A stretch of 62,866 bases of DNA, the filler included, from Octopus bimaculoides (Eukaryota), in assembly GCF_001194135.2 (NCBI RefSeq). It is 7 parts of 6 records of this genome, joined end to end, with 100 filler letters (N's around TTAATTAATTAA, not from the genome) between each part and the next. Parts side by side here need not be neighbours in the genome. Positions count along the whole stretch, not along the records: positions 1 to 10,593 come from NC_068985.1; 6 more parts are not named here. One strand, written 5' to 3'. Positions 1 through 9,079 of the stretch are shown piece after piece (the first letter of the stretch is position 1; each line of letters opens with the position of its first letter). The notes below the pieces were generated by a model that saw only the letters and a program-made list of their open reading frames with translations, ran no database searches and was not told the DNA's origin. Both the position numbers and the translations under genes were made by a program.

Positions 1-66
<66 letters not shown>

Positions 67-103
67 GTGTGTCTGTGTGTGTGTGTGTGTATATATATAT
101 ATG
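1..103. repeat. (AT)n/(GT)n microsatellite
   Basis: Directly visible dinucleotide runs. Confidence 0.95.
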
Positions 104-140
104 CACACTATTATATTGATATAATAAGTTGCTACCTTAC

Positions 141-966
141 CTTTTTCAAACATCTTCACCGTGAAAATAGCTGGTTGAATCTTGTTTCGAAAGATCGCCT
201 TGAATTCTTTCCTGAAGGCAGGAGTGATTAGTATGTACATCACAAAATTGAAAGTGTTGTTTGCAAACAGCACCAACACAGTTATACTGTCCAATTCATT
301 TGCAACCGGGTGAAAAGCCAGTGATATAGATATAGGCAAGGTGGAAACAAGAAAGGAAAAGTTCAGTGCCAATATCAGTTTTACACTACTGCTATTGCTT
401 CGGATGTTTTTATGCGTTATCTTATATATTAAGGTGATACTTGCCAGAATTAAGATAAATGCTGGCAAAAAGCAATAAATACAGATTTGGATTCGAATAA
501 CTTGATCTTCGCTAAGGAAACCTGTGACATTGTTGACAACACATCCAACGTTGAAAATACAGAGAACCCCGAAAAGCTTCAGAATGGATCGTTTCGGGGA
601 CATATTTACATGCCTGAGTTGATTACAAAATGGTTGGTGCACGGCGATTGTTCTCTGTACAGCTATCAAAACTGTGAGCCATGAAGAAGCTTGCAAGCAG
701 ATATTCAACAAAAACAGCGAAATTTTCTCGTAGAGCGGGTTGAACGACATAGAGATGAGAAAAGTTTTCAGAATGAAAGGGCTTAGTCCAAAACATAAAG
801 ATAACAAATCCATTATGCAAAGAAATCGGAGATATAGTACGAGTTTGAATTCCTGCGTTGATCTCTTCCGTAGGATTATCAACGATACGACATTTCCTAG
901 AGTTCCAATGAAAATCATCAATATTCCCAAAATAATTACTATGATGGAGTCTATGCGTTCAGCCAT
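141..966 (-). CDS. Rhodopsin-class (class A) 7TM GPCR of peptide-receptor-like/chemoreceptor-like type; one exon holding all 7 TMs, C-terminus probably completed by an exon outside the window
   Basis: Hand translation of the minus strand from ATG at 966 (in-frame TAA upstream at 991-993) gives 275 stop-free codons: MAERIDSIIVIILGILMIFIGTLGNVVSLIIL (TM1 GN), LRFLCIMDLL (TM2 D), SSWLTVLIAVQRTIAVHQP (TM3, ERY-like), YCFLPAFILILASITLIYKI (TM5), KLILALNFSFLVSTLPISI (TM6), LFANNTFNFVMYILITPAFRKEF (TM7/helix 8). It ends at a consensus donor AAG|GTAAG (GT at 140-139). Confidence 0.9.
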
Positions 967-1046
967 CGTGAAATAACTCCGTTCTAGAATTTACCAAAAG
1001 TTCATTGAAGTAATTATATTATTTATAATAATATTTGGCTTTGTAC

Positions 1047-1472
<426 letters not shown>

Positions 1473-1928
1473 ACAGAACCAGAACAGGTTGTAATTGAGG
1501 AGTGAAGAGCAATGGTAGAACAACTTGTTGAAGTAATGGCCAATTACTTTTGACGTTACACGTAGTTTTGGTGGTATATTTGGCTGAAATAGGAATATTG
1601 CATGCCGCCTTCGTAAACAAACGTATTGAAAACATACAATAATTGAATATTGTGTTCCTAATGAAGACACAACAATTGATAATCTTTGAAGTAATTGCTT
1701 CTTGCTTTCTTTCTCTCTCTCTCCCTCTCCATCCTTCTCTCTCTTTATCTTTCTCTTTCTCTTTTTCTCTTTCTTTCTCTCTCTCATCCTCTCTCTCTCT
1801 CCCTCTCTCCCCTTCTCTCTCTTTCTTTCTCTTTCCTTGACTTTCGATCTTTAATTGTCTTTTTATTTCCTTTTTCTTCCTCTCTTTCTCAATTTGTATT
1901 CATTAGTTTGTGCAAACGTGTGTATTCA

Positions 1929-4479: not shown

Positions 4480-5337
4480 TCTCACACACACACACACATC
4501 TCACACACACACATCTCATACACACATCTCTCTCTCACACACACACATGCGCGCATATCTCACTTATGATAGAGCCTCTACAGAGTTGCTTGATATGCTA
4601 AAAGTAACAGTCAAATATCCATCAAATCAAACCCCATCATTTTAAAGTTAGGAAGGTAGAATCGGATAGCACTCGACAAGTTGGAATGGTCTCAGCCGGA
4701 ATACTTATTGGTCATAGGCCTTTTCGGTTAGAGTTGCAACAACAGCCGCGGCAGGAGCAACAACAGCCGCGGCAGGAGCAACAACAACAATAACAAGAAC
4801 TACCTTTTCTTGCAGTATGTTAATGTCTTTATGTTGTCTTTATGTTGTCTTTATGTTGTCGCTCGAACTGCGAGAAATGGTAGAGAAATTTTCTTCCAGT
4901 TACAATGTTAATGCCATGAAAAGTGCTGAGGTTGTTGTGGTGTGGTGGTGGTGGTGGTGGTGGTGGGGGTACCTTGTACAAATGTAGTCCTAGATACACA
5001 AAGCGCTTGAGAAAAGACGGGATGGTAACGGTTGAACTACCTTTAAGTTTCAGGTTTACTCAGTAAAACATTGATCTGTGACTAAATAACAATATAAAAC
5101 AACAGTGACGACGACGGCAGCAACACCAACAACAGCAGCAATAACAATGATGACACTAACAACTACAACTACAATAGTAACGGCAACAACAACAACAACA
5201 ACAATGACGATAACGACGACAACAACAACAACAGCAACAACCTTACTTCCAATAAGCTTCGCTTCTAAAGGCGCCTGTTTCGTTGTTTGCTCAATCTGAT
5301 AGTTTTGATTTGGAATACAAGAAATAGCAGTGAAGTC

Positions 5338-5605
5338 TCTCTCTTACTCTCTTACTTGTTTCAGTCATTTGACTGTGGCCATGCTGGAGCGCCACCTTTT
5401 AGTCGAGCTAATCGACCCCAGGACTTATTCTTTGTAAGCCTAGTTCTTATTCTATCGGTCTCTTTAGCCGAACCGCTAAGTTACGGGGACGTAAATACAC
5501 CAGTATCGGTTGTCAAGCGGTGTTGAGGGGATAAACACAGACACACAAACATACACACACACACACACACACACGCACACATATATATATATATATATAT
5601 ATATA
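5338..5605 (-). mobile_element. SINE family 1, 3' half plus internal (CA/AT)n
   Basis: cttacttgtttcagtcatttgactgtggccatgctggagc...gccgaaccgctaagttacggggacgtaaa, near-identical to 25163-25378 and 58680-58860. Confidence 0.85.
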
Positions 5606-6376
5606 NNNNNNNNNNNNNNNNNNNNNNNNNNNNNNNNNNNNNNNNNNNNNNNNNNNNNNNNNNNNNNNNNNNNNNNNNNNNNNNNNNNNNNNNNNNNNNN
5701 NNNNNNNNNNNNNNNNNNNNNNNNNNNNNNNNNNNNNNNNNNNNNNNNNNNNNNNNNNNNNNNNNNNNNNNNNNNNNNNNNNNNNNNNNNNNNNNNNNNN
5801 NNNNNNNNNNNNNNNNNNNNNNNNNNNNNNNNNNNNNNNNNNNNNNNNNNNNNNNNNNNNNNNNNNNNNNNNNNNNNNNNNNNNNNNNNNNNNNNNNNNN
5901 NNNNNNNNNNNNNNNNNNNNNNNNNNNNNNNNNNNNNNNNNNNNNNNNNNNNNNNNNNNNNNNNNNNNNNNNNNNNNNNNNNNNNNNNNNNNNNNNNNNN
6001 NNNNNNNNNNNNNNNNNNNNNNNNNNNNNNNNNNNNNNNNNNNNNNNNNNNNNNNNNNNNNNNNNNNNNNNNNNNNNNNNNNNNNNNNNNNNNNNNNNNN
6101 NNNNNNNNNNNNNNNNNNNNNNNNNNNNNNNNNNNNNNNNNNNNNNNNNNNNNNNNNNNNNNNNNNNNNNNNNNNNNNNNNNNNNNNNNNNNNNNNNNNN
6201 NNNNNNNNNNNNNNNNNNNNNNNNNNNNNNNNNNNNNNNNNNNNNNNNNNNNNNNNNNNNNNNNNNNNNNNNNNNNNNNNNNNNNNNNNNNNNNNNNNNN
6301 NNNNNNNNNNNNNNNNNNNNNNNNNNNNNNNNNNNNNNNNNNNNNNNNNNNNNNNNNNNNNNNNNNNNNNNNNNNN

Positions 6377-6850
6377 CGCCGCCGCTGCCTCGCCACCACC
6401 GCCACCATCCCGACCAATAACAATAATAACAACAATCTTGCAATTTAATTAGATTACTACTGGCAATTGAAACGTCAATTTTTCCGTGACTAACAGGCTG
6501 GACCGAATTCATTTTGTTTTGTATTTAATTAGAAACAAGAAATACAACAGCAACAAGTATTAGCAAAATAACAGCAGCAGCAACAACAATAACACCGTCA
6601 CAATGAACCTGATGTTGGCGTCCACTACCACCATCACCACCACAGCAACAACAACGGTAACATCATTGCCACCCCTATCACTACCAACAACAACACAGCA
6701 ACCATCACCATCACTAGCACAAGTTCCACCACCATCACCATCTCCACCACCACCAATTACCTCCGCCAACAGCAACACCGCTTCCTCCAGCACCAGCAGC
6801 AACATCAACAACGCCGTTACCATCACCACCATCATCATCTGCAACAGAGA
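6377..6850. repeat. Trinucleotide-rich low complexity (GCC/CAC/AAC/CAT)
   Basis: Directly visible; similar tracts at 5100-5240, 10694-10920, 13830-14110 and 17460-17700. Confidence 0.9.
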
Positions 6851-7430
6851 CAACATTACGTGATAGCGAGGACGCTTCTACAGCGTTGCTCGTCTTGTAT
6901 GAAGTCAGAGCCGAATTTTCGTGAAATAGCTCACCATATCGCCCTCAAAAACCGTTAAATATACAGGTTAGCTTAAATATGATATGCCAGAAAAGAAGAC
7001 AGGATGGTCATAGGAAGGATGTATATCAAATGATAGATTCCTGAGCCGCAAAAATATTTCTCTCAGCACGAAGGTACTTCGCCAGTGCACGACTGAAGCT
7101 CACGAAGTATCACGAAGTATCACAAAGCACAGTTCTAAAACCCTTTGCAAAGCTGTCCTACACAATACCCGTACAATCCCACACGCAACCAAATGATAAG
7201 GGTGATGGCAGAGTCGTTAAAACGTCAGATAGAATGTCTCGCAGTATTTGTTCTGGCTCTTTTCAGTGTGAGTTCAAATTCTGCCGTATCAACTTCATTT
7301 TCATTTAGATGAAAAAAAAAAAAGACCCATAGCAAAGCATTGGATTGGCGGAACTGTTAAAACGTTGGACTAGGTAGCTTAGAATATTTGTTCCTGTTCT
7401 ATGCTTTCTGGTTTCAAATTTTACCATGGG

Positions 7431-8436: not shown

Positions 8437-8890
8437 CAGGATGTCCCCAAAAAATATACTCACATTTTGACTCCCCATAACTCACTGAATTTTTCAATTC
8501 TTTTCCGATCAATTTGACCCTAATAATGGCAGCAGTATGACTAAATTTTCAAGTAAGAAAATCTAACATAAAGTGCTATTGGAAGCATGAAAATATCATG
8601 GAAGTGCAAAGACAGTTTAGAGGACAGTTTCACAAAGATCCACCAATGCCATGCACCATTGCACGCACATGAGATAAGTTCGAATCAGGCAGAACTGATT
8701 AATGTCCATGAGGAGCATTCAGGAAGACCACGGTCATCAACCGGCTCCACAAAGGAAGAACAATTGCTGGAAACTTTCTAGCAATCCCCACAGAAATCTG
8801 TATGACAAATGGCTCGTGAGATGGGGGTCCCCAAATCAAACGCCCATCACATCTTAAAGTGAGTTGGTTGGAAATGTTGGACGAAATAAC
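8437..8890 (+). mobile_element. 5' fragment of a Tc1/mariner-superfamily (DD37D-like) transposon
   Basis: TA|CAGGATGTCCCC terminus; decayed HTH region ...INVHEEHSGRPRSSTGSTKEEQLLETF...KSVxQMAREMGVPKSNAHHILK. Confidence 0.65.
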
Positions 8891-9079
8891 ATGGATCCTG
8901 GAATACATCACGGGAAGTCTGTAGCTTATTCCCCTTCCTATACCCAAATAATTTTGATAAGTTGTGCTTCACTAACATCCTCATGTTTGCTCCTATTCTT
9001 TTTCTGCCCTTTCAAAAAGACAAACACACTGTACCTATTGTTAACTATTTCCCTATATGTATTAACCCTCCCAACCACT

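What the first reader, a model, noticed from the sequence alone, without database searches (positions are those of the whole stretch)
141..966. Hidden intact, minimal seven-TM GPCR missing from the ORF track
Seen: 275 uninterrupted codons with seven hydrophobic segments, an N-terminus of only ~7 residues, very short ECL2 and ICL3, QRT in place of D/ERY and NFVMY in place of NPxxY. The track omits it because the frame runs through the microsatellite to the window edge without a stop; a GTAAG donor sits right after helix 8. Known: such single-exon, FMRFamide/Srw-like class A receptors are lineage-expanded in molluscs and include candidate chemoreceptors. Inference: a divergent chemosensory or peptide receptor, possibly at the edge of a tandem cluster.
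Basis: partly seen in the sequence, partly recalled or inferred. Interest (0 to 1): 0.7.

Follow-up and report, generated by a model that had tools for sequence, protein, structure and literature searches.

The report
Compact orphan octopus GPCR gene
The stretch is the main coding exon of a real, intact but very compact G-protein-coupled receptor gene of Octopus bimaculoides that public annotation already lists as an uncharacterised protein, so it is a sound but ordinary finding.

Summary
On the minus strand, window 966..141 carries an ATG followed by 275 sense codons. They fold into seven TM helices plus helix 8, with QRT at the DRY position and NFVMY at the NPxxY position. An AAAG|GTAAGG splice donor sits at 141|140.

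It is a class A GPCR. Pfam Srw scores 28.3 bits against a cut-off of 22.2. The AF2 model has pTM 0.80, and its Foldseek matches are all class A receptors.

The window is 100% identical to O. bimaculoides chromosome CM046605.1. RefSeq already annotates the gene there as LOC128247874 (XP_052824037.1, 325 aa). That model uses exactly the predicted donor, then an 18.1-kb intron and a 50-aa terminal exon.

NFxxY is not decay. 136 of the 150 nearest relatives have it, and so does human GPR139, the best solved-structure match to the family profile.

The gene is unusual in three ways:
- It has the shortest 7TM core of 136 relatives.
- It lacks the TM3 cysteine (Glu80 instead).
- No relative above about 36% identity was found.

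No paralogue lies within the 39 kb examined, so a tandem cluster is not supported. Ligand, expression and selection remain untested. Interest is low: a new member of a known kind.

The parts
141..966 (-). Coding exon 1 of the GPCR gene (O. bimaculoides LOC128247874): ATG at 966-964, 275 codons, plus the first base of codon 276 (base 141).
   Evidence: Translation. Residues 1-275 are identical to XP_052824037.1. Exon 1 joined to exon 2 reproduces the 325-aa protein exactly.
991..993 (-). In-frame TAA upstream of the start codon, which fixes Met1 as the first possible start.
   Evidence: Read from the sequence. The stop-free run begins at 990.
135..140 (-). 5' splice donor GTAAGG (exon ...AAAAAG | GTAAGG), phase 1.
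   Evidence: The RefSeq model uses it, joining to the acceptor TTCATCTTTCAG|AT at L003 28948/28949.
1..134 (-). First 134 nt of the 18.1-kb intron. It includes the compound (AT)n/(GT)n microsatellite (about 1-111), which abuts an assembly gap.
   Evidence: TRF. Window position 1 equals L003 10966, and an N run starts at L003 10967.
868..963 (-). TM1 (residues 2-33), containing G24-N25 (N1.50).
   Evidence: AF2 model; alignments.
763..840 (-). TM2 (residues 43-68), containing D53 (D2.50).
637..738 (-). TM3 (residues 77-110). E80 sits where 90% of relatives have Cys3.25. W96 is present, and QRT (104-106, window 657-649) takes the place of D/ERY.
523..597 (-). TM4 (residues 124-148), followed by a 4-residue ECL2 with an NVT sequon.
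   Evidence: read from the sequence.
409..510 (-). TM5 (residues 153-186), containing P168 (P5.50).
313..393 (-). TM6 (residues 192-218), containing F205 and T209-L-P211 (P6.50; no W6.48, as in the rest of the family).
226..288 (-). TM7 (residues 227-247), containing N236 and NFVMY (240-244, window 249-235).
190..222 (-). Helix 8 (residues 249-259), containing F251-R252.
967..1838 (-). 5' flank of the gene. It is almost wholly microsatellite: (CT)70 at 1047-1187, AT-rich repeats at 1198-1275, (TATC)48 at 1281-1472 and a CT-rich array at 1705-1838. No promoter was identified.
   Evidence: TRF; sequence.

Best explanation
Window 966..141 (minus strand) is the first and main coding exon of an intact orphan class A (rhodopsin-like) GPCR gene of Octopus bimaculoides, RefSeq LOC128247874.

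**Where it belongs.** It sits in the spiralian expansion of receptors that carry NFxxY in TM7. These relate to the FMRFamide-type-1/MIP/proctolin receptors and to vertebrate GPR139.

**Shown here.**
- The whole 7TM bundle and helix 8 lie in this one exon.
- In the RefSeq model a phase-1 donor at 141|140 joins the exon, across an 18.1-kb intron, to a 152-nt terminal exon that adds 50 residues found nowhere else.

**Inferred mechanism.** It works as a conventional ligand-gated, G-protein-coupled receptor.
- The sodium-site and activation residues are kept: N1.50, D2.50, R3.50, N7.49 and Y7.53.
- The P112-F113 pair in ICL2 (34.50/34.51), which docks G-alpha, is kept, as are P5.50 and P6.50.
- The extracellular face is pared down: a roughly 7-residue N-terminus, a roughly 4-residue ECL2 and no TM3-ECL2 disulfide. 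The pocket should therefore be open and lidless. This suits a small, perhaps aromatic, ligand or a short amidated peptide better than a large one.

**Selection (inferred).** Its nearest paralogues are only 30-36% identical, yet the ORF is open and every invariant family position is kept. It has therefore been under purifying selection for most of its history.
For: **Identity and locus**
- Open frame and donor.
- ORF length far beyond chance: 330 codons against a maximum of 190 in 500 shuffles.
- Window 100% identical to CM046605.1.
- XP_052824037.1 equals residues 1-275 plus a spliced tail; the acceptor has a polypyrimidine tract followed by CAG.

**Class A GPCR**
- Pfam Srw 28.3 bits against a gathering cut-off of 22.2.
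- 15 of 16 aligned family members hit 7tm_1.
- PDB phmmer: galanin receptor 2 at 1.2e-6 and GPR139 at 1.3e-5.
- Exhaustive phmmer: 451 relatives with E < 1e-3; the named ones closest to it are O. bimaculoides GPCRs.
- AF2 model pLDDT 80.8, pTM 0.80, seven TM helices plus helix 8.
- Foldseek top 50 are all class A receptors, TM-score 0.68-0.78.

**Family features**
- All 12 invariant and 10 near-invariant columns of the family alignment are kept.
- NFxxY in 136 of 150 relatives, and also in GPR139, the best profile match at 1.2e-25.

**Literature**
- The FMRFa-type-1/MIP/proctolin receptor clade is sister to GPR139/142 (PMC8557429).
- Cephalopod class A expansions have been described (PMC6408891, PMC11886862).
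Against: - Pfam 7tm_1 itself gives no hit for this protein at E <= 1. The Srw hit covers only TM1-3.
- It keeps only 65% of the 52 family consensus columns, against a median of 83% for relatives.
- Cys3.25 is Glu, whereas 134 of 150 relatives have Cys.
- Its loop deletions make the core the shortest of 136 relatives, and the family's RRPxLGQ motif in ICL3 is missing.
- No relative above about 36% identity appeared among 5.8 billion clusters, and no transcript-derived copy was found. Neither expression nor current selection is therefore shown.
- The relatives examined are single-exon genes with their own stop codon. The 50-aa tail has no homologue apart from an older 78-aa model at the same locus. 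The second exon therefore rests on gene models only.
Confidence: 0.8

Rival explanations
1. It is a recently disabled or never-expressed relic. The frame is still open, but the receptor no longer works. The loss of Cys3.25, the missing ICL3 motif and the trimmed ECL2, ICL3 and ECL3 would then be early decay of a lineage-specific duplicate.
For: - It has the shortest core of 136 relatives and keeps only 65% of the consensus columns.
- E80 replaces Cys3.25.
- No orthologue and no transcript-derived protein were found in the collections.
- The ancestral stop position seen in relatives is absent here.
Against: - 275 AT-rich codons contain no stop or frameshift, although the gene has diverged more than 60% from any paralogue.
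- All invariant and near-invariant family residues are kept.
- AF2 builds a confident 7TM bundle.
- The deletions fall in loops, not in helices.
- Several octopus relatives (P0003, P0009, P0011, P0015-17, P0021, P0023) also lack Cys3.25, so that loss is a feature of the subfamily.
Confidence: 0.15
2. The gene is really single-exon, like its relatives. The transcript would read on past residue 275 into the microsatellite, giving a (Thr-His)n-type tail, and stop inside what is now an assembly gap. The RefSeq second exon, 18 kb away, would then be a gene-model artefact or a rare isoform.
For: - P0008 and P0002 are single-exon genes with their own stops.
- Homology to relatives runs right up to the exon end (IFTVK aligns with IFAVN and IFAIS), and P0003 stops a few codons later.
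- The tail is unique, and an older model assigned it to a different gene, P0170.
- 5.6 kb of the intron is N.
Against: - The donor AAG|GTAAGG matches the consensus at 8 of 9 positions, and the acceptor has a strong polypyrimidine tract followed by CAG.
- The two exons join in frame and give a complete protein.
- Two independent gene models use the same acceptor and the same phase.
Confidence: 0.25
3. It is a chance open frame in AT-rich, repeat-rich DNA, with hydrophobic stretches produced by T-rich codons.
For: The window is 35-40% GC and full of microsatellites that hold frames open.
Against: - The run is 330 codons against a maximum of 190 in 500 shuffles.
- There are significant HMM, sequence and fold matches to GPCRs.
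Confidence: 0.01

Closest known systems
Octopus bimaculoides short class A GPCR paralogues (e.g. UniRef A0A0L8GGA3, 288 aa; XP_014770947.1 / LOC106869642, 287 aa)
   Same: - Same species and the same compact build (270-335 aa).
- Very short N-terminus.
- (E/Q/H)R at the DRY position and NFxxY in TM7.
- TxP in TM6 and FR in helix 8.
- The 7TM domain lies in a single exon.
   Different: - Only 29-36% identical.
- The window gene lacks about 10 residues of ICL3, including the RRPxLGQ motif, and about 5 of ECL2.
- It has Glu at Cys3.25.
- In the RefSeq model it has a spliced 50-aa tail in place of its own stop.
Human GPR139 (PDB 7VUG, 9M42) and the protostome FMRFamide-type-1/MIP/proctolin/myosuppressin receptor supergroup
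   Same: - GPR139 is the best solved-structure match of the family profile (1.2e-25).
- It is the only full-length PDB match of the single protein.
- GPR139 also has NFxxY in TM7.
- The literature places FMRFa-type-1-like receptors as sister to GPR139/142 (PMC8557429).
   Different: - GPR139 keeps DRY and Cys3.25 and has longer loops.
- No tree with reference receptors was built here, so membership of the clade is inferred from the motif and the profile score only.
- The ligand is unknown.
Nematode Srw chemoreceptor family (Pfam PF10324)
   Same: It is the only Pfam model the protein passes (28.3 bits against 22.2). Srw is the nematode chemoreceptor family that most resembles peptide receptors (PMC2576165).
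   Different: - The match covers only TM1-3 (profile positions 5-136 of 319).
- Relatives score as well or better on 7tm_1.
- Srw is a nematode expansion, so this is similarity within a clan and not orthology.
Melanocortin receptors (MC1R-MC5R): compact class A receptors (from general knowledge, not tested here)
   Same: - Short N-terminus and an ECL2 of only a few residues.
- No TM3-ECL2 disulfide.
- About 300 aa in all, yet fully functional.
- They show that the pared-down build seen here is compatible with signalling.
   Different: - No specific sequence relationship was found.
- Melanocortin receptors keep DRY and a (D/N)PxxY motif.
- The resemblance is architectural only.

Membership tests
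Class A (rhodopsin-like) GPCR | Seven transmembrane helices followed by an amphipathic helix 8 | tested here: met
   Seven hydropathy peaks. AF2 gives seven long helices plus helix 8 at 249-259, with pTM 0.80.
Class A (rhodopsin-like) GPCR | Significant profile match to a family of the GPCR_A clan | tested here: met
   PF10324 Srw scores 28.3 bits, above its cut-off of 22.2. PF00001 7tm_1 gives no hit for this protein itself, but 15 of 16 aligned relatives hit it.
Class A (rhodopsin-like) GPCR | Fold superposes on solved class A receptors | tested here: met
   The Foldseek PDB top 50 are all class A GPCRs, with TM-scores 0.68-0.78 and E-values near 1e-6.
Class A (rhodopsin-like) GPCR | Signature residues N1.50, D2.50, R3.50, P5.50, P6.50, N7.49 and Y7.53 | tested here: met
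   N25, D53, R105, P168, P211, N240 and Y244 are all present. P7.50 is Phe and W6.48 is Thr, as in the rest of its clade.
Class A (rhodopsin-like) GPCR | Conserved TM3 (C3.25)-ECL2 disulfide | tested here: not met
   E80 sits in the column where 134 of 150 relatives have Cys. Several octopus paralogues lack both cysteines as well. This feature is not universal in class A.
Class A (rhodopsin-like) GPCR | Ligand-dependent G-protein or arrestin signalling | not testable with these tools
   This needs heterologous expression and signalling assays.
GPR139 / FMRFamide-type-1 / MIP / proctolin receptor supergroup | NFxxY instead of NPxxY in TM7, shared with GPR139 | tested here: met
   NFVMY lies at 240-244. 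136 of 150 relatives have Phe at 7.50. GPR139 aligns with NFFLY, whereas galanin receptor 2 shows NPIVY.
GPR139 / FMRFamide-type-1 / MIP / proctolin receptor supergroup | Closest solved or characterised receptor is a member of the supergroup | tested here: inconclusive
   GPR139 is the top profile hit at 93 bits, but the alpha-1A adrenoceptor (86 bits) and galanin receptor 2 (83 bits) are close behind.
GPR139 / FMRFamide-type-1 / MIP / proctolin receptor supergroup | Phylogenetic placement inside the clade alongside de-orphanised reference receptors | not tested
Nematode Srw chemoreceptors (PF10324) | Full-length match to the Srw profile | tested here: not met
   The match covers only residues 16-139, which is profile positions 5-136 of 319.
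Cephalopod lineage-specific class A expansion (Ritschard 2019 groups 1-2; Nath 2025 LSEs) | Nearest relatives are confined to cephalopods, with no one-to-one orthologue elsewhere | tested here: inconclusive
   The named nearest relatives are from O. bimaculoides. Other top hits come from unnamed ENA and Logan assemblies. The next named hits are Haliotis, Owenia and rotifers at E of about 1e-13 or weaker.
Cephalopod lineage-specific class A expansion (Ritschard 2019 groups 1-2; Nath 2025 LSEs) | Tandem arrangement with paralogues | tested here: not met
   tblastn finds no second copy in the window or in the 39.1-kb locus L003, about 30% of which is N. One relative's locus, L002, does hold a tandem pair 8.4 kb apart.
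Cephalopod lineage-specific class A expansion (Ritschard 2019 groups 1-2; Nath 2025 LSEs) | Tissue-specific expression outside the brain (sucker, skin, axial nerve cord, testes) | not testable with these tools

The most novel reading that the evidence does not exclude
This may be close to a minimal working class A receptor. It has the shortest 7TM core in its clade: 219 residues from N1.50 to Y7.53, an ECL2 and ICL3 of about 4-5 residues, no TM3-ECL2 disulfide and Q instead of D/E at 3.49. If so, it may signal constitutively, or sense a small molecule in a lidless pocket. It also gained a new C-terminal tail when it lost its stop codon and captured a distant exon. That would make it a recently remodelled, octopus-specific sensory receptor.
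Probability: 0.1. Interest if true: 0.5.

Novelty: new member of a known kind. Interest (0 to 1): 0.2.

Why it matters
Little changes if the finding is true. It adds one more orphan to the known lineage-specific class A GPCR expansions of cephalopods, and the gene model is already public.

Its modest value has three parts:
- It gives a clean example showing that QRT and NFxxY are hallmarks of the GPR139/FMRFamide-receptor-like clade and not signs of decay.
- Its very compact build could serve as a natural test of how little loop a class A receptor needs.
- It shows that the scan's ORF track misses exons whose frame runs off the end of a piece.

Tried and rejected
- **Word-indexed protein searches.** With the protein and then the family alignment, these returned almost nothing beyond the self-hit. 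The exhaustive HMMER search was needed to find the family.
- **P0001 locus look-up.** An exact look-up of the 220-aa fragment P0001 found no contig. The locus was reached through its cluster mate P0161 instead.
- **Paralogues.** tblastn for paralogues in the window and in L003 found none.
- **Non-coding RNA.** An Rfam scan of the piece found nothing.
- **Was exon 2 borrowed from a ZC3HC1/NIPA-like gene?** The only evidence is a sub-threshold Pfam zf-C3HC hit (20 bits against a cut-off of 22.2). The peptide occurs nowhere else except in an older local model. The idea is left as unproven.
- **Tc1/mariner-like remnant at about 8587-8900.** Only weak HTH hits turned up: Pfam HTH_IclR at 22.7 bits and a PDB match at E = 0.72. 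It is not confirmed.
- **dN/dS.** It could not be computed. No orthologue exists in the searchable collections, and the paralogues are too divergent (30-36% identity), so synonymous sites are saturated.
- **Literature.** No paper mentions LOC128247874 or XP_052824037.

Full report
**1. What is in the sequence**

The feature lies on the minus strand. An ATG at window 966-964 is preceded nine codons upstream by an in-frame TAA (993-991). It opens a frame of 275 sense codons that ends with ...TVKMFEK at 142. Base 141 (G) is followed by GTAAGG at 140-135.

Read without splicing, the frame continues through 17 more codons and then through the (AC)n/(AT)n microsatellite to window position 1, 322 codons from the ATG. 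A microsatellite of that composition cannot contain a stop in any frame. The ORF listing leaves out frames that run off the source, and this explains the 'missing from the ORF track' remark.

The stop-free run of 330 codons compares with a mean of 113 +/- 19 and a maximum of 190 in 500 shuffles of the piece. It is not a chance frame.

**2. It is a class A GPCR**

- Hydropathy gives seven peaks.
- Pfam gives one hit, 7TM_GPCR_Srw, at 28.3 bits against a gathering cut-off of 22.2 (E = 1.4e-6). It covers only TM1-3. 7tm_1 does not hit this protein itself.
- phmmer against PDB sequences finds galanin receptor 2 (1.2e-6), GPR139 (1.3e-5, over the full length), neurotensin receptor 1 and others.
- An AlphaFold2 model built on a 16-sequence family alignment has mean pLDDT 80.8 and pTM 0.80. 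Its helices are 2-33, 43-68, 77-110, 124-148, 153-186, 192-218 and 227-247, with helix 8 at 249-259.
- The 50 best Foldseek matches in the PDB are all class A receptors, with TM-scores of 0.68-0.78.

**3. Where it comes from, and whether it was hidden**

The word-indexed protein search found one protein, P0001. It is 220 aa long and identical to residues 1-220. Its 90% cluster also holds P0161, which is XP_052824037.1, 'uncharacterized protein LOC128247874 [Octopus bimaculoides]', 325 aa.

The locus of P0161 (L003; GCA_001194135.2, chromosome CM046605.1) is 100% identical to the window on both sides of the window's N gap. Window position 1 abuts a 3.7-kb assembly gap.

P0161 equals window residues 1-275 plus 50 further residues. 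Joining L003 10001-10826 (window 966-141) to L003 28949-29100 reproduces it exactly. The junction runs from the donor AAAG|GTAAGG to the acceptor TTATGATTTGTGTTTGTATTCATCTTTCAG|AT. The intron is 18,122 nt, of which 5,602 are N.

The gene is not hidden from public annotation. It simply has no name and no literature.

**4. The family**

An exhaustive HMMER search of 1.84 billion representatives gave 451 hits at E <= 1e-3. The nearest non-self hit scores 1e-24 at 32-36% identity.

The closest named relatives are O. bimaculoides proteins of 287-288 aa, annotated only as 'GPCR family 1 profile domain-containing' or 'uncharacterized'. More distant named hits come from Haliotis, the annelid Owenia and rotifers.

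Fifteen of the 16 aligned members hit Pfam 7tm_1, and 12 hit Srw. Two relatives whose loci could be fetched are single-exon genes with their own stop codon. One of them has a tandem paralogue 8.4 kb away.

**5. The odd motifs are clade features, not decay**

- Phe at 7.50 (NFxxY) occurs in 136 of the 150 best hits.
- Position 3.49 is E in 103, D in 23, Q in 12 and H in 4. R3.50 is nearly invariant.
- The family profile's best solved-structure match is human GPR139 (1.2e-25). Its TM7 aligns as NTAINFFLY, so it too has NFxxY.
- This fits published work. That work places the protostome FMRFamide-type-1, NPY-4, MIP, proctolin and myosuppressin receptors as a clade sister to deuterostome GPR139/142 (PMC8557429; see also PMC12208981).

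I did not build a tree with reference receptors, so clade membership rests on the motif and the profile score.

**6. What is unusual about this copy**

It keeps all 12 invariant and all 10 near-invariant columns of the 16-sequence alignment. It also keeps the ICL2 Pro-Phe pair after R3.50.

Several features set it apart:
- It keeps only 65% of the 52 consensus columns of the 150-sequence alignment. The median for relatives is 83% and the 5th percentile is 47%.
- It has Glu80 where 134 of 150 relatives have Cys3.25, so the canonical TM3-ECL2 disulfide cannot form. Several octopus paralogues have also lost both cysteines.
- It is the most compact of 136 relatives. N1.50 to Y7.53 spans 219 residues against a median of 266. 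P5.50 to P6.50 spans 43, the shortest. P6.50 to Y7.53 spans 33, the second shortest.
- It lacks about 10 residues of ICL3, including the family's RRPxLGQ motif.
- In the model, ECL2 is about 4 residues and ICL3 about 5.

No protein between about 36% and 100% identity exists in the collections searched. No orthologue is in hand, and dN/dS cannot be computed.

**7. The C-terminus**

Homology to relatives runs to the very end of the exon: IFTVK aligns with IFAVN and IFAIS. P0003 stops a few codons later. The window gene has no stop there.

The 50-aa tail of the RefSeq model occurs elsewhere only in P0170, a 78-aa protein from the older O. bimaculoides set. P0170 uses the same acceptor and phase but has a different upstream part, which is not found in L003.

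The tail gives a sub-threshold Pfam zf-C3HC hit of 20 bits against a cut-off of 22.2. I do not rely on it.

Whether the splice is really used, or whether the transcript reads on into the microsatellite, cannot be decided without RNA data. The splice signals are strong, and two gene models agree on the acceptor. I favour the spliced form at about 0.7.

**8. Context**

RefSeq annotates no other gene in the 39-kb locus. There is no second GPCR copy either, although about 30% of the locus is N. The suggestion that the gene sits at the edge of a tandem cluster is not supported.

The 5' flank of the gene is almost entirely microsatellite.

**9. How it most likely works**

- **Shown:** the fold, the family and the gene structure as modelled.
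- **Inferred:** it is a ligand-gated G-protein-coupled receptor with a small, lidless extracellular face, so a small ligand or a short amidated peptide seems most likely. Given the long divergence with an intact frame, it has been under purifying selection for most of its history.
- **Untested:** ligand, coupling, expression and present-day constraint.

Published surveys describe cephalopod class A expansions with tissue-specific expression outside the brain and signs of positive selection (PMC6408891). They also treat lineage-specific class A subsets in Lophotrochozoa as candidate chemoreceptors (PMC11886862). I could not establish whether this gene is in those sets.

**10. Verdict**

The gene is an ordinary, already annotated, uncharacterised member of a known receptor expansion. 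Its only notable trait is its extreme compactness. Interest is 0.2.

Noticed in passing
window 967-1838: The kilobase just upstream of the start codon is nearly all microsatellite. On the plus strand it holds (AG)70 at 1047-1187, AT-rich repeats at 1198-1275, (TAGA)48 at 1281-1472 and a TC-rich array at 1705-1838. That leaves little unique sequence for a proximal promoter.
   Followed up: partly
window 5340-5551: An interspersed repeat of about 205 bp, SINE-like in size. Copies of 81-85% identity lie on another chromosome (L001 14756-14960) and in the gene's own intron (L003, about 21846-22032).
   Followed up: partly
window 5606-6376 and flanks 5105-5299, 6560-6863: A 771-N assembly gap is flanked on both sides by long (CAA/ACA/ACC)n low-complexity runs. 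These give spurious Thr/Gln-rich ORFs.
   Followed up: no
window 8587-8900 (+): A broken frame reads ...HEEHSGRPRSSTGSTKEEQLLETF.QSPQKSV.QMAREMGVPKSNAHHILK... It looks like the helix-turn-helix of a Tc1/mariner-type transposase. Only weak hits support this: Pfam HTH_IclR at 22.7 bits, HTH_32 at 14.8 bits and a PDB match at E = 0.72.
   Followed up: partly
window 4736-4786 and 4824-4860: Two perfect short tandem arrays lie close together: a 21-mer (GCAACAACAGCCGCGGCAGGA, 2.4 copies) and an 11-mer (TGTCTTTATGT, 3.4 copies), both at 100% identity.
   Followed up: no
L003 28949-29100 (exon 2, outside the window): The terminal exon's peptide (...SHEPLCPWSSNPSP...) gives a sub-threshold match to Pfam zf-C3HC (NuBaID/NIPA-type zinc finger). 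An older model, A0A0L8G7Z0 (78 aa), assigned it to a separate gene. It may be an exon captured from elsewhere.
   Followed up: partly
L003 28542-28884 (outside the window): An inverted repeat of about 240 bp at 81% identity, overlapping itself and MITE-like, lies 65 bp upstream of the exon-2 acceptor.
   Followed up: no
L002 695-1594 and 10001-10954: A relative (P0002, unnamed ENA assembly ERZ21867824) sits in tandem with a paralogue that is 62% identical and 8.4 kb upstream. This shows that the family does form local clusters elsewhere.
   Followed up: partly
window 307-966 (-): The older public protein P0001 (220 aa) ends at ...AFHP, just before a weak GT (CCG|GTTGCA) inside TM6/ECL3. That early gene model truncated the receptor within the 7TM domain.
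   Followed up: yes
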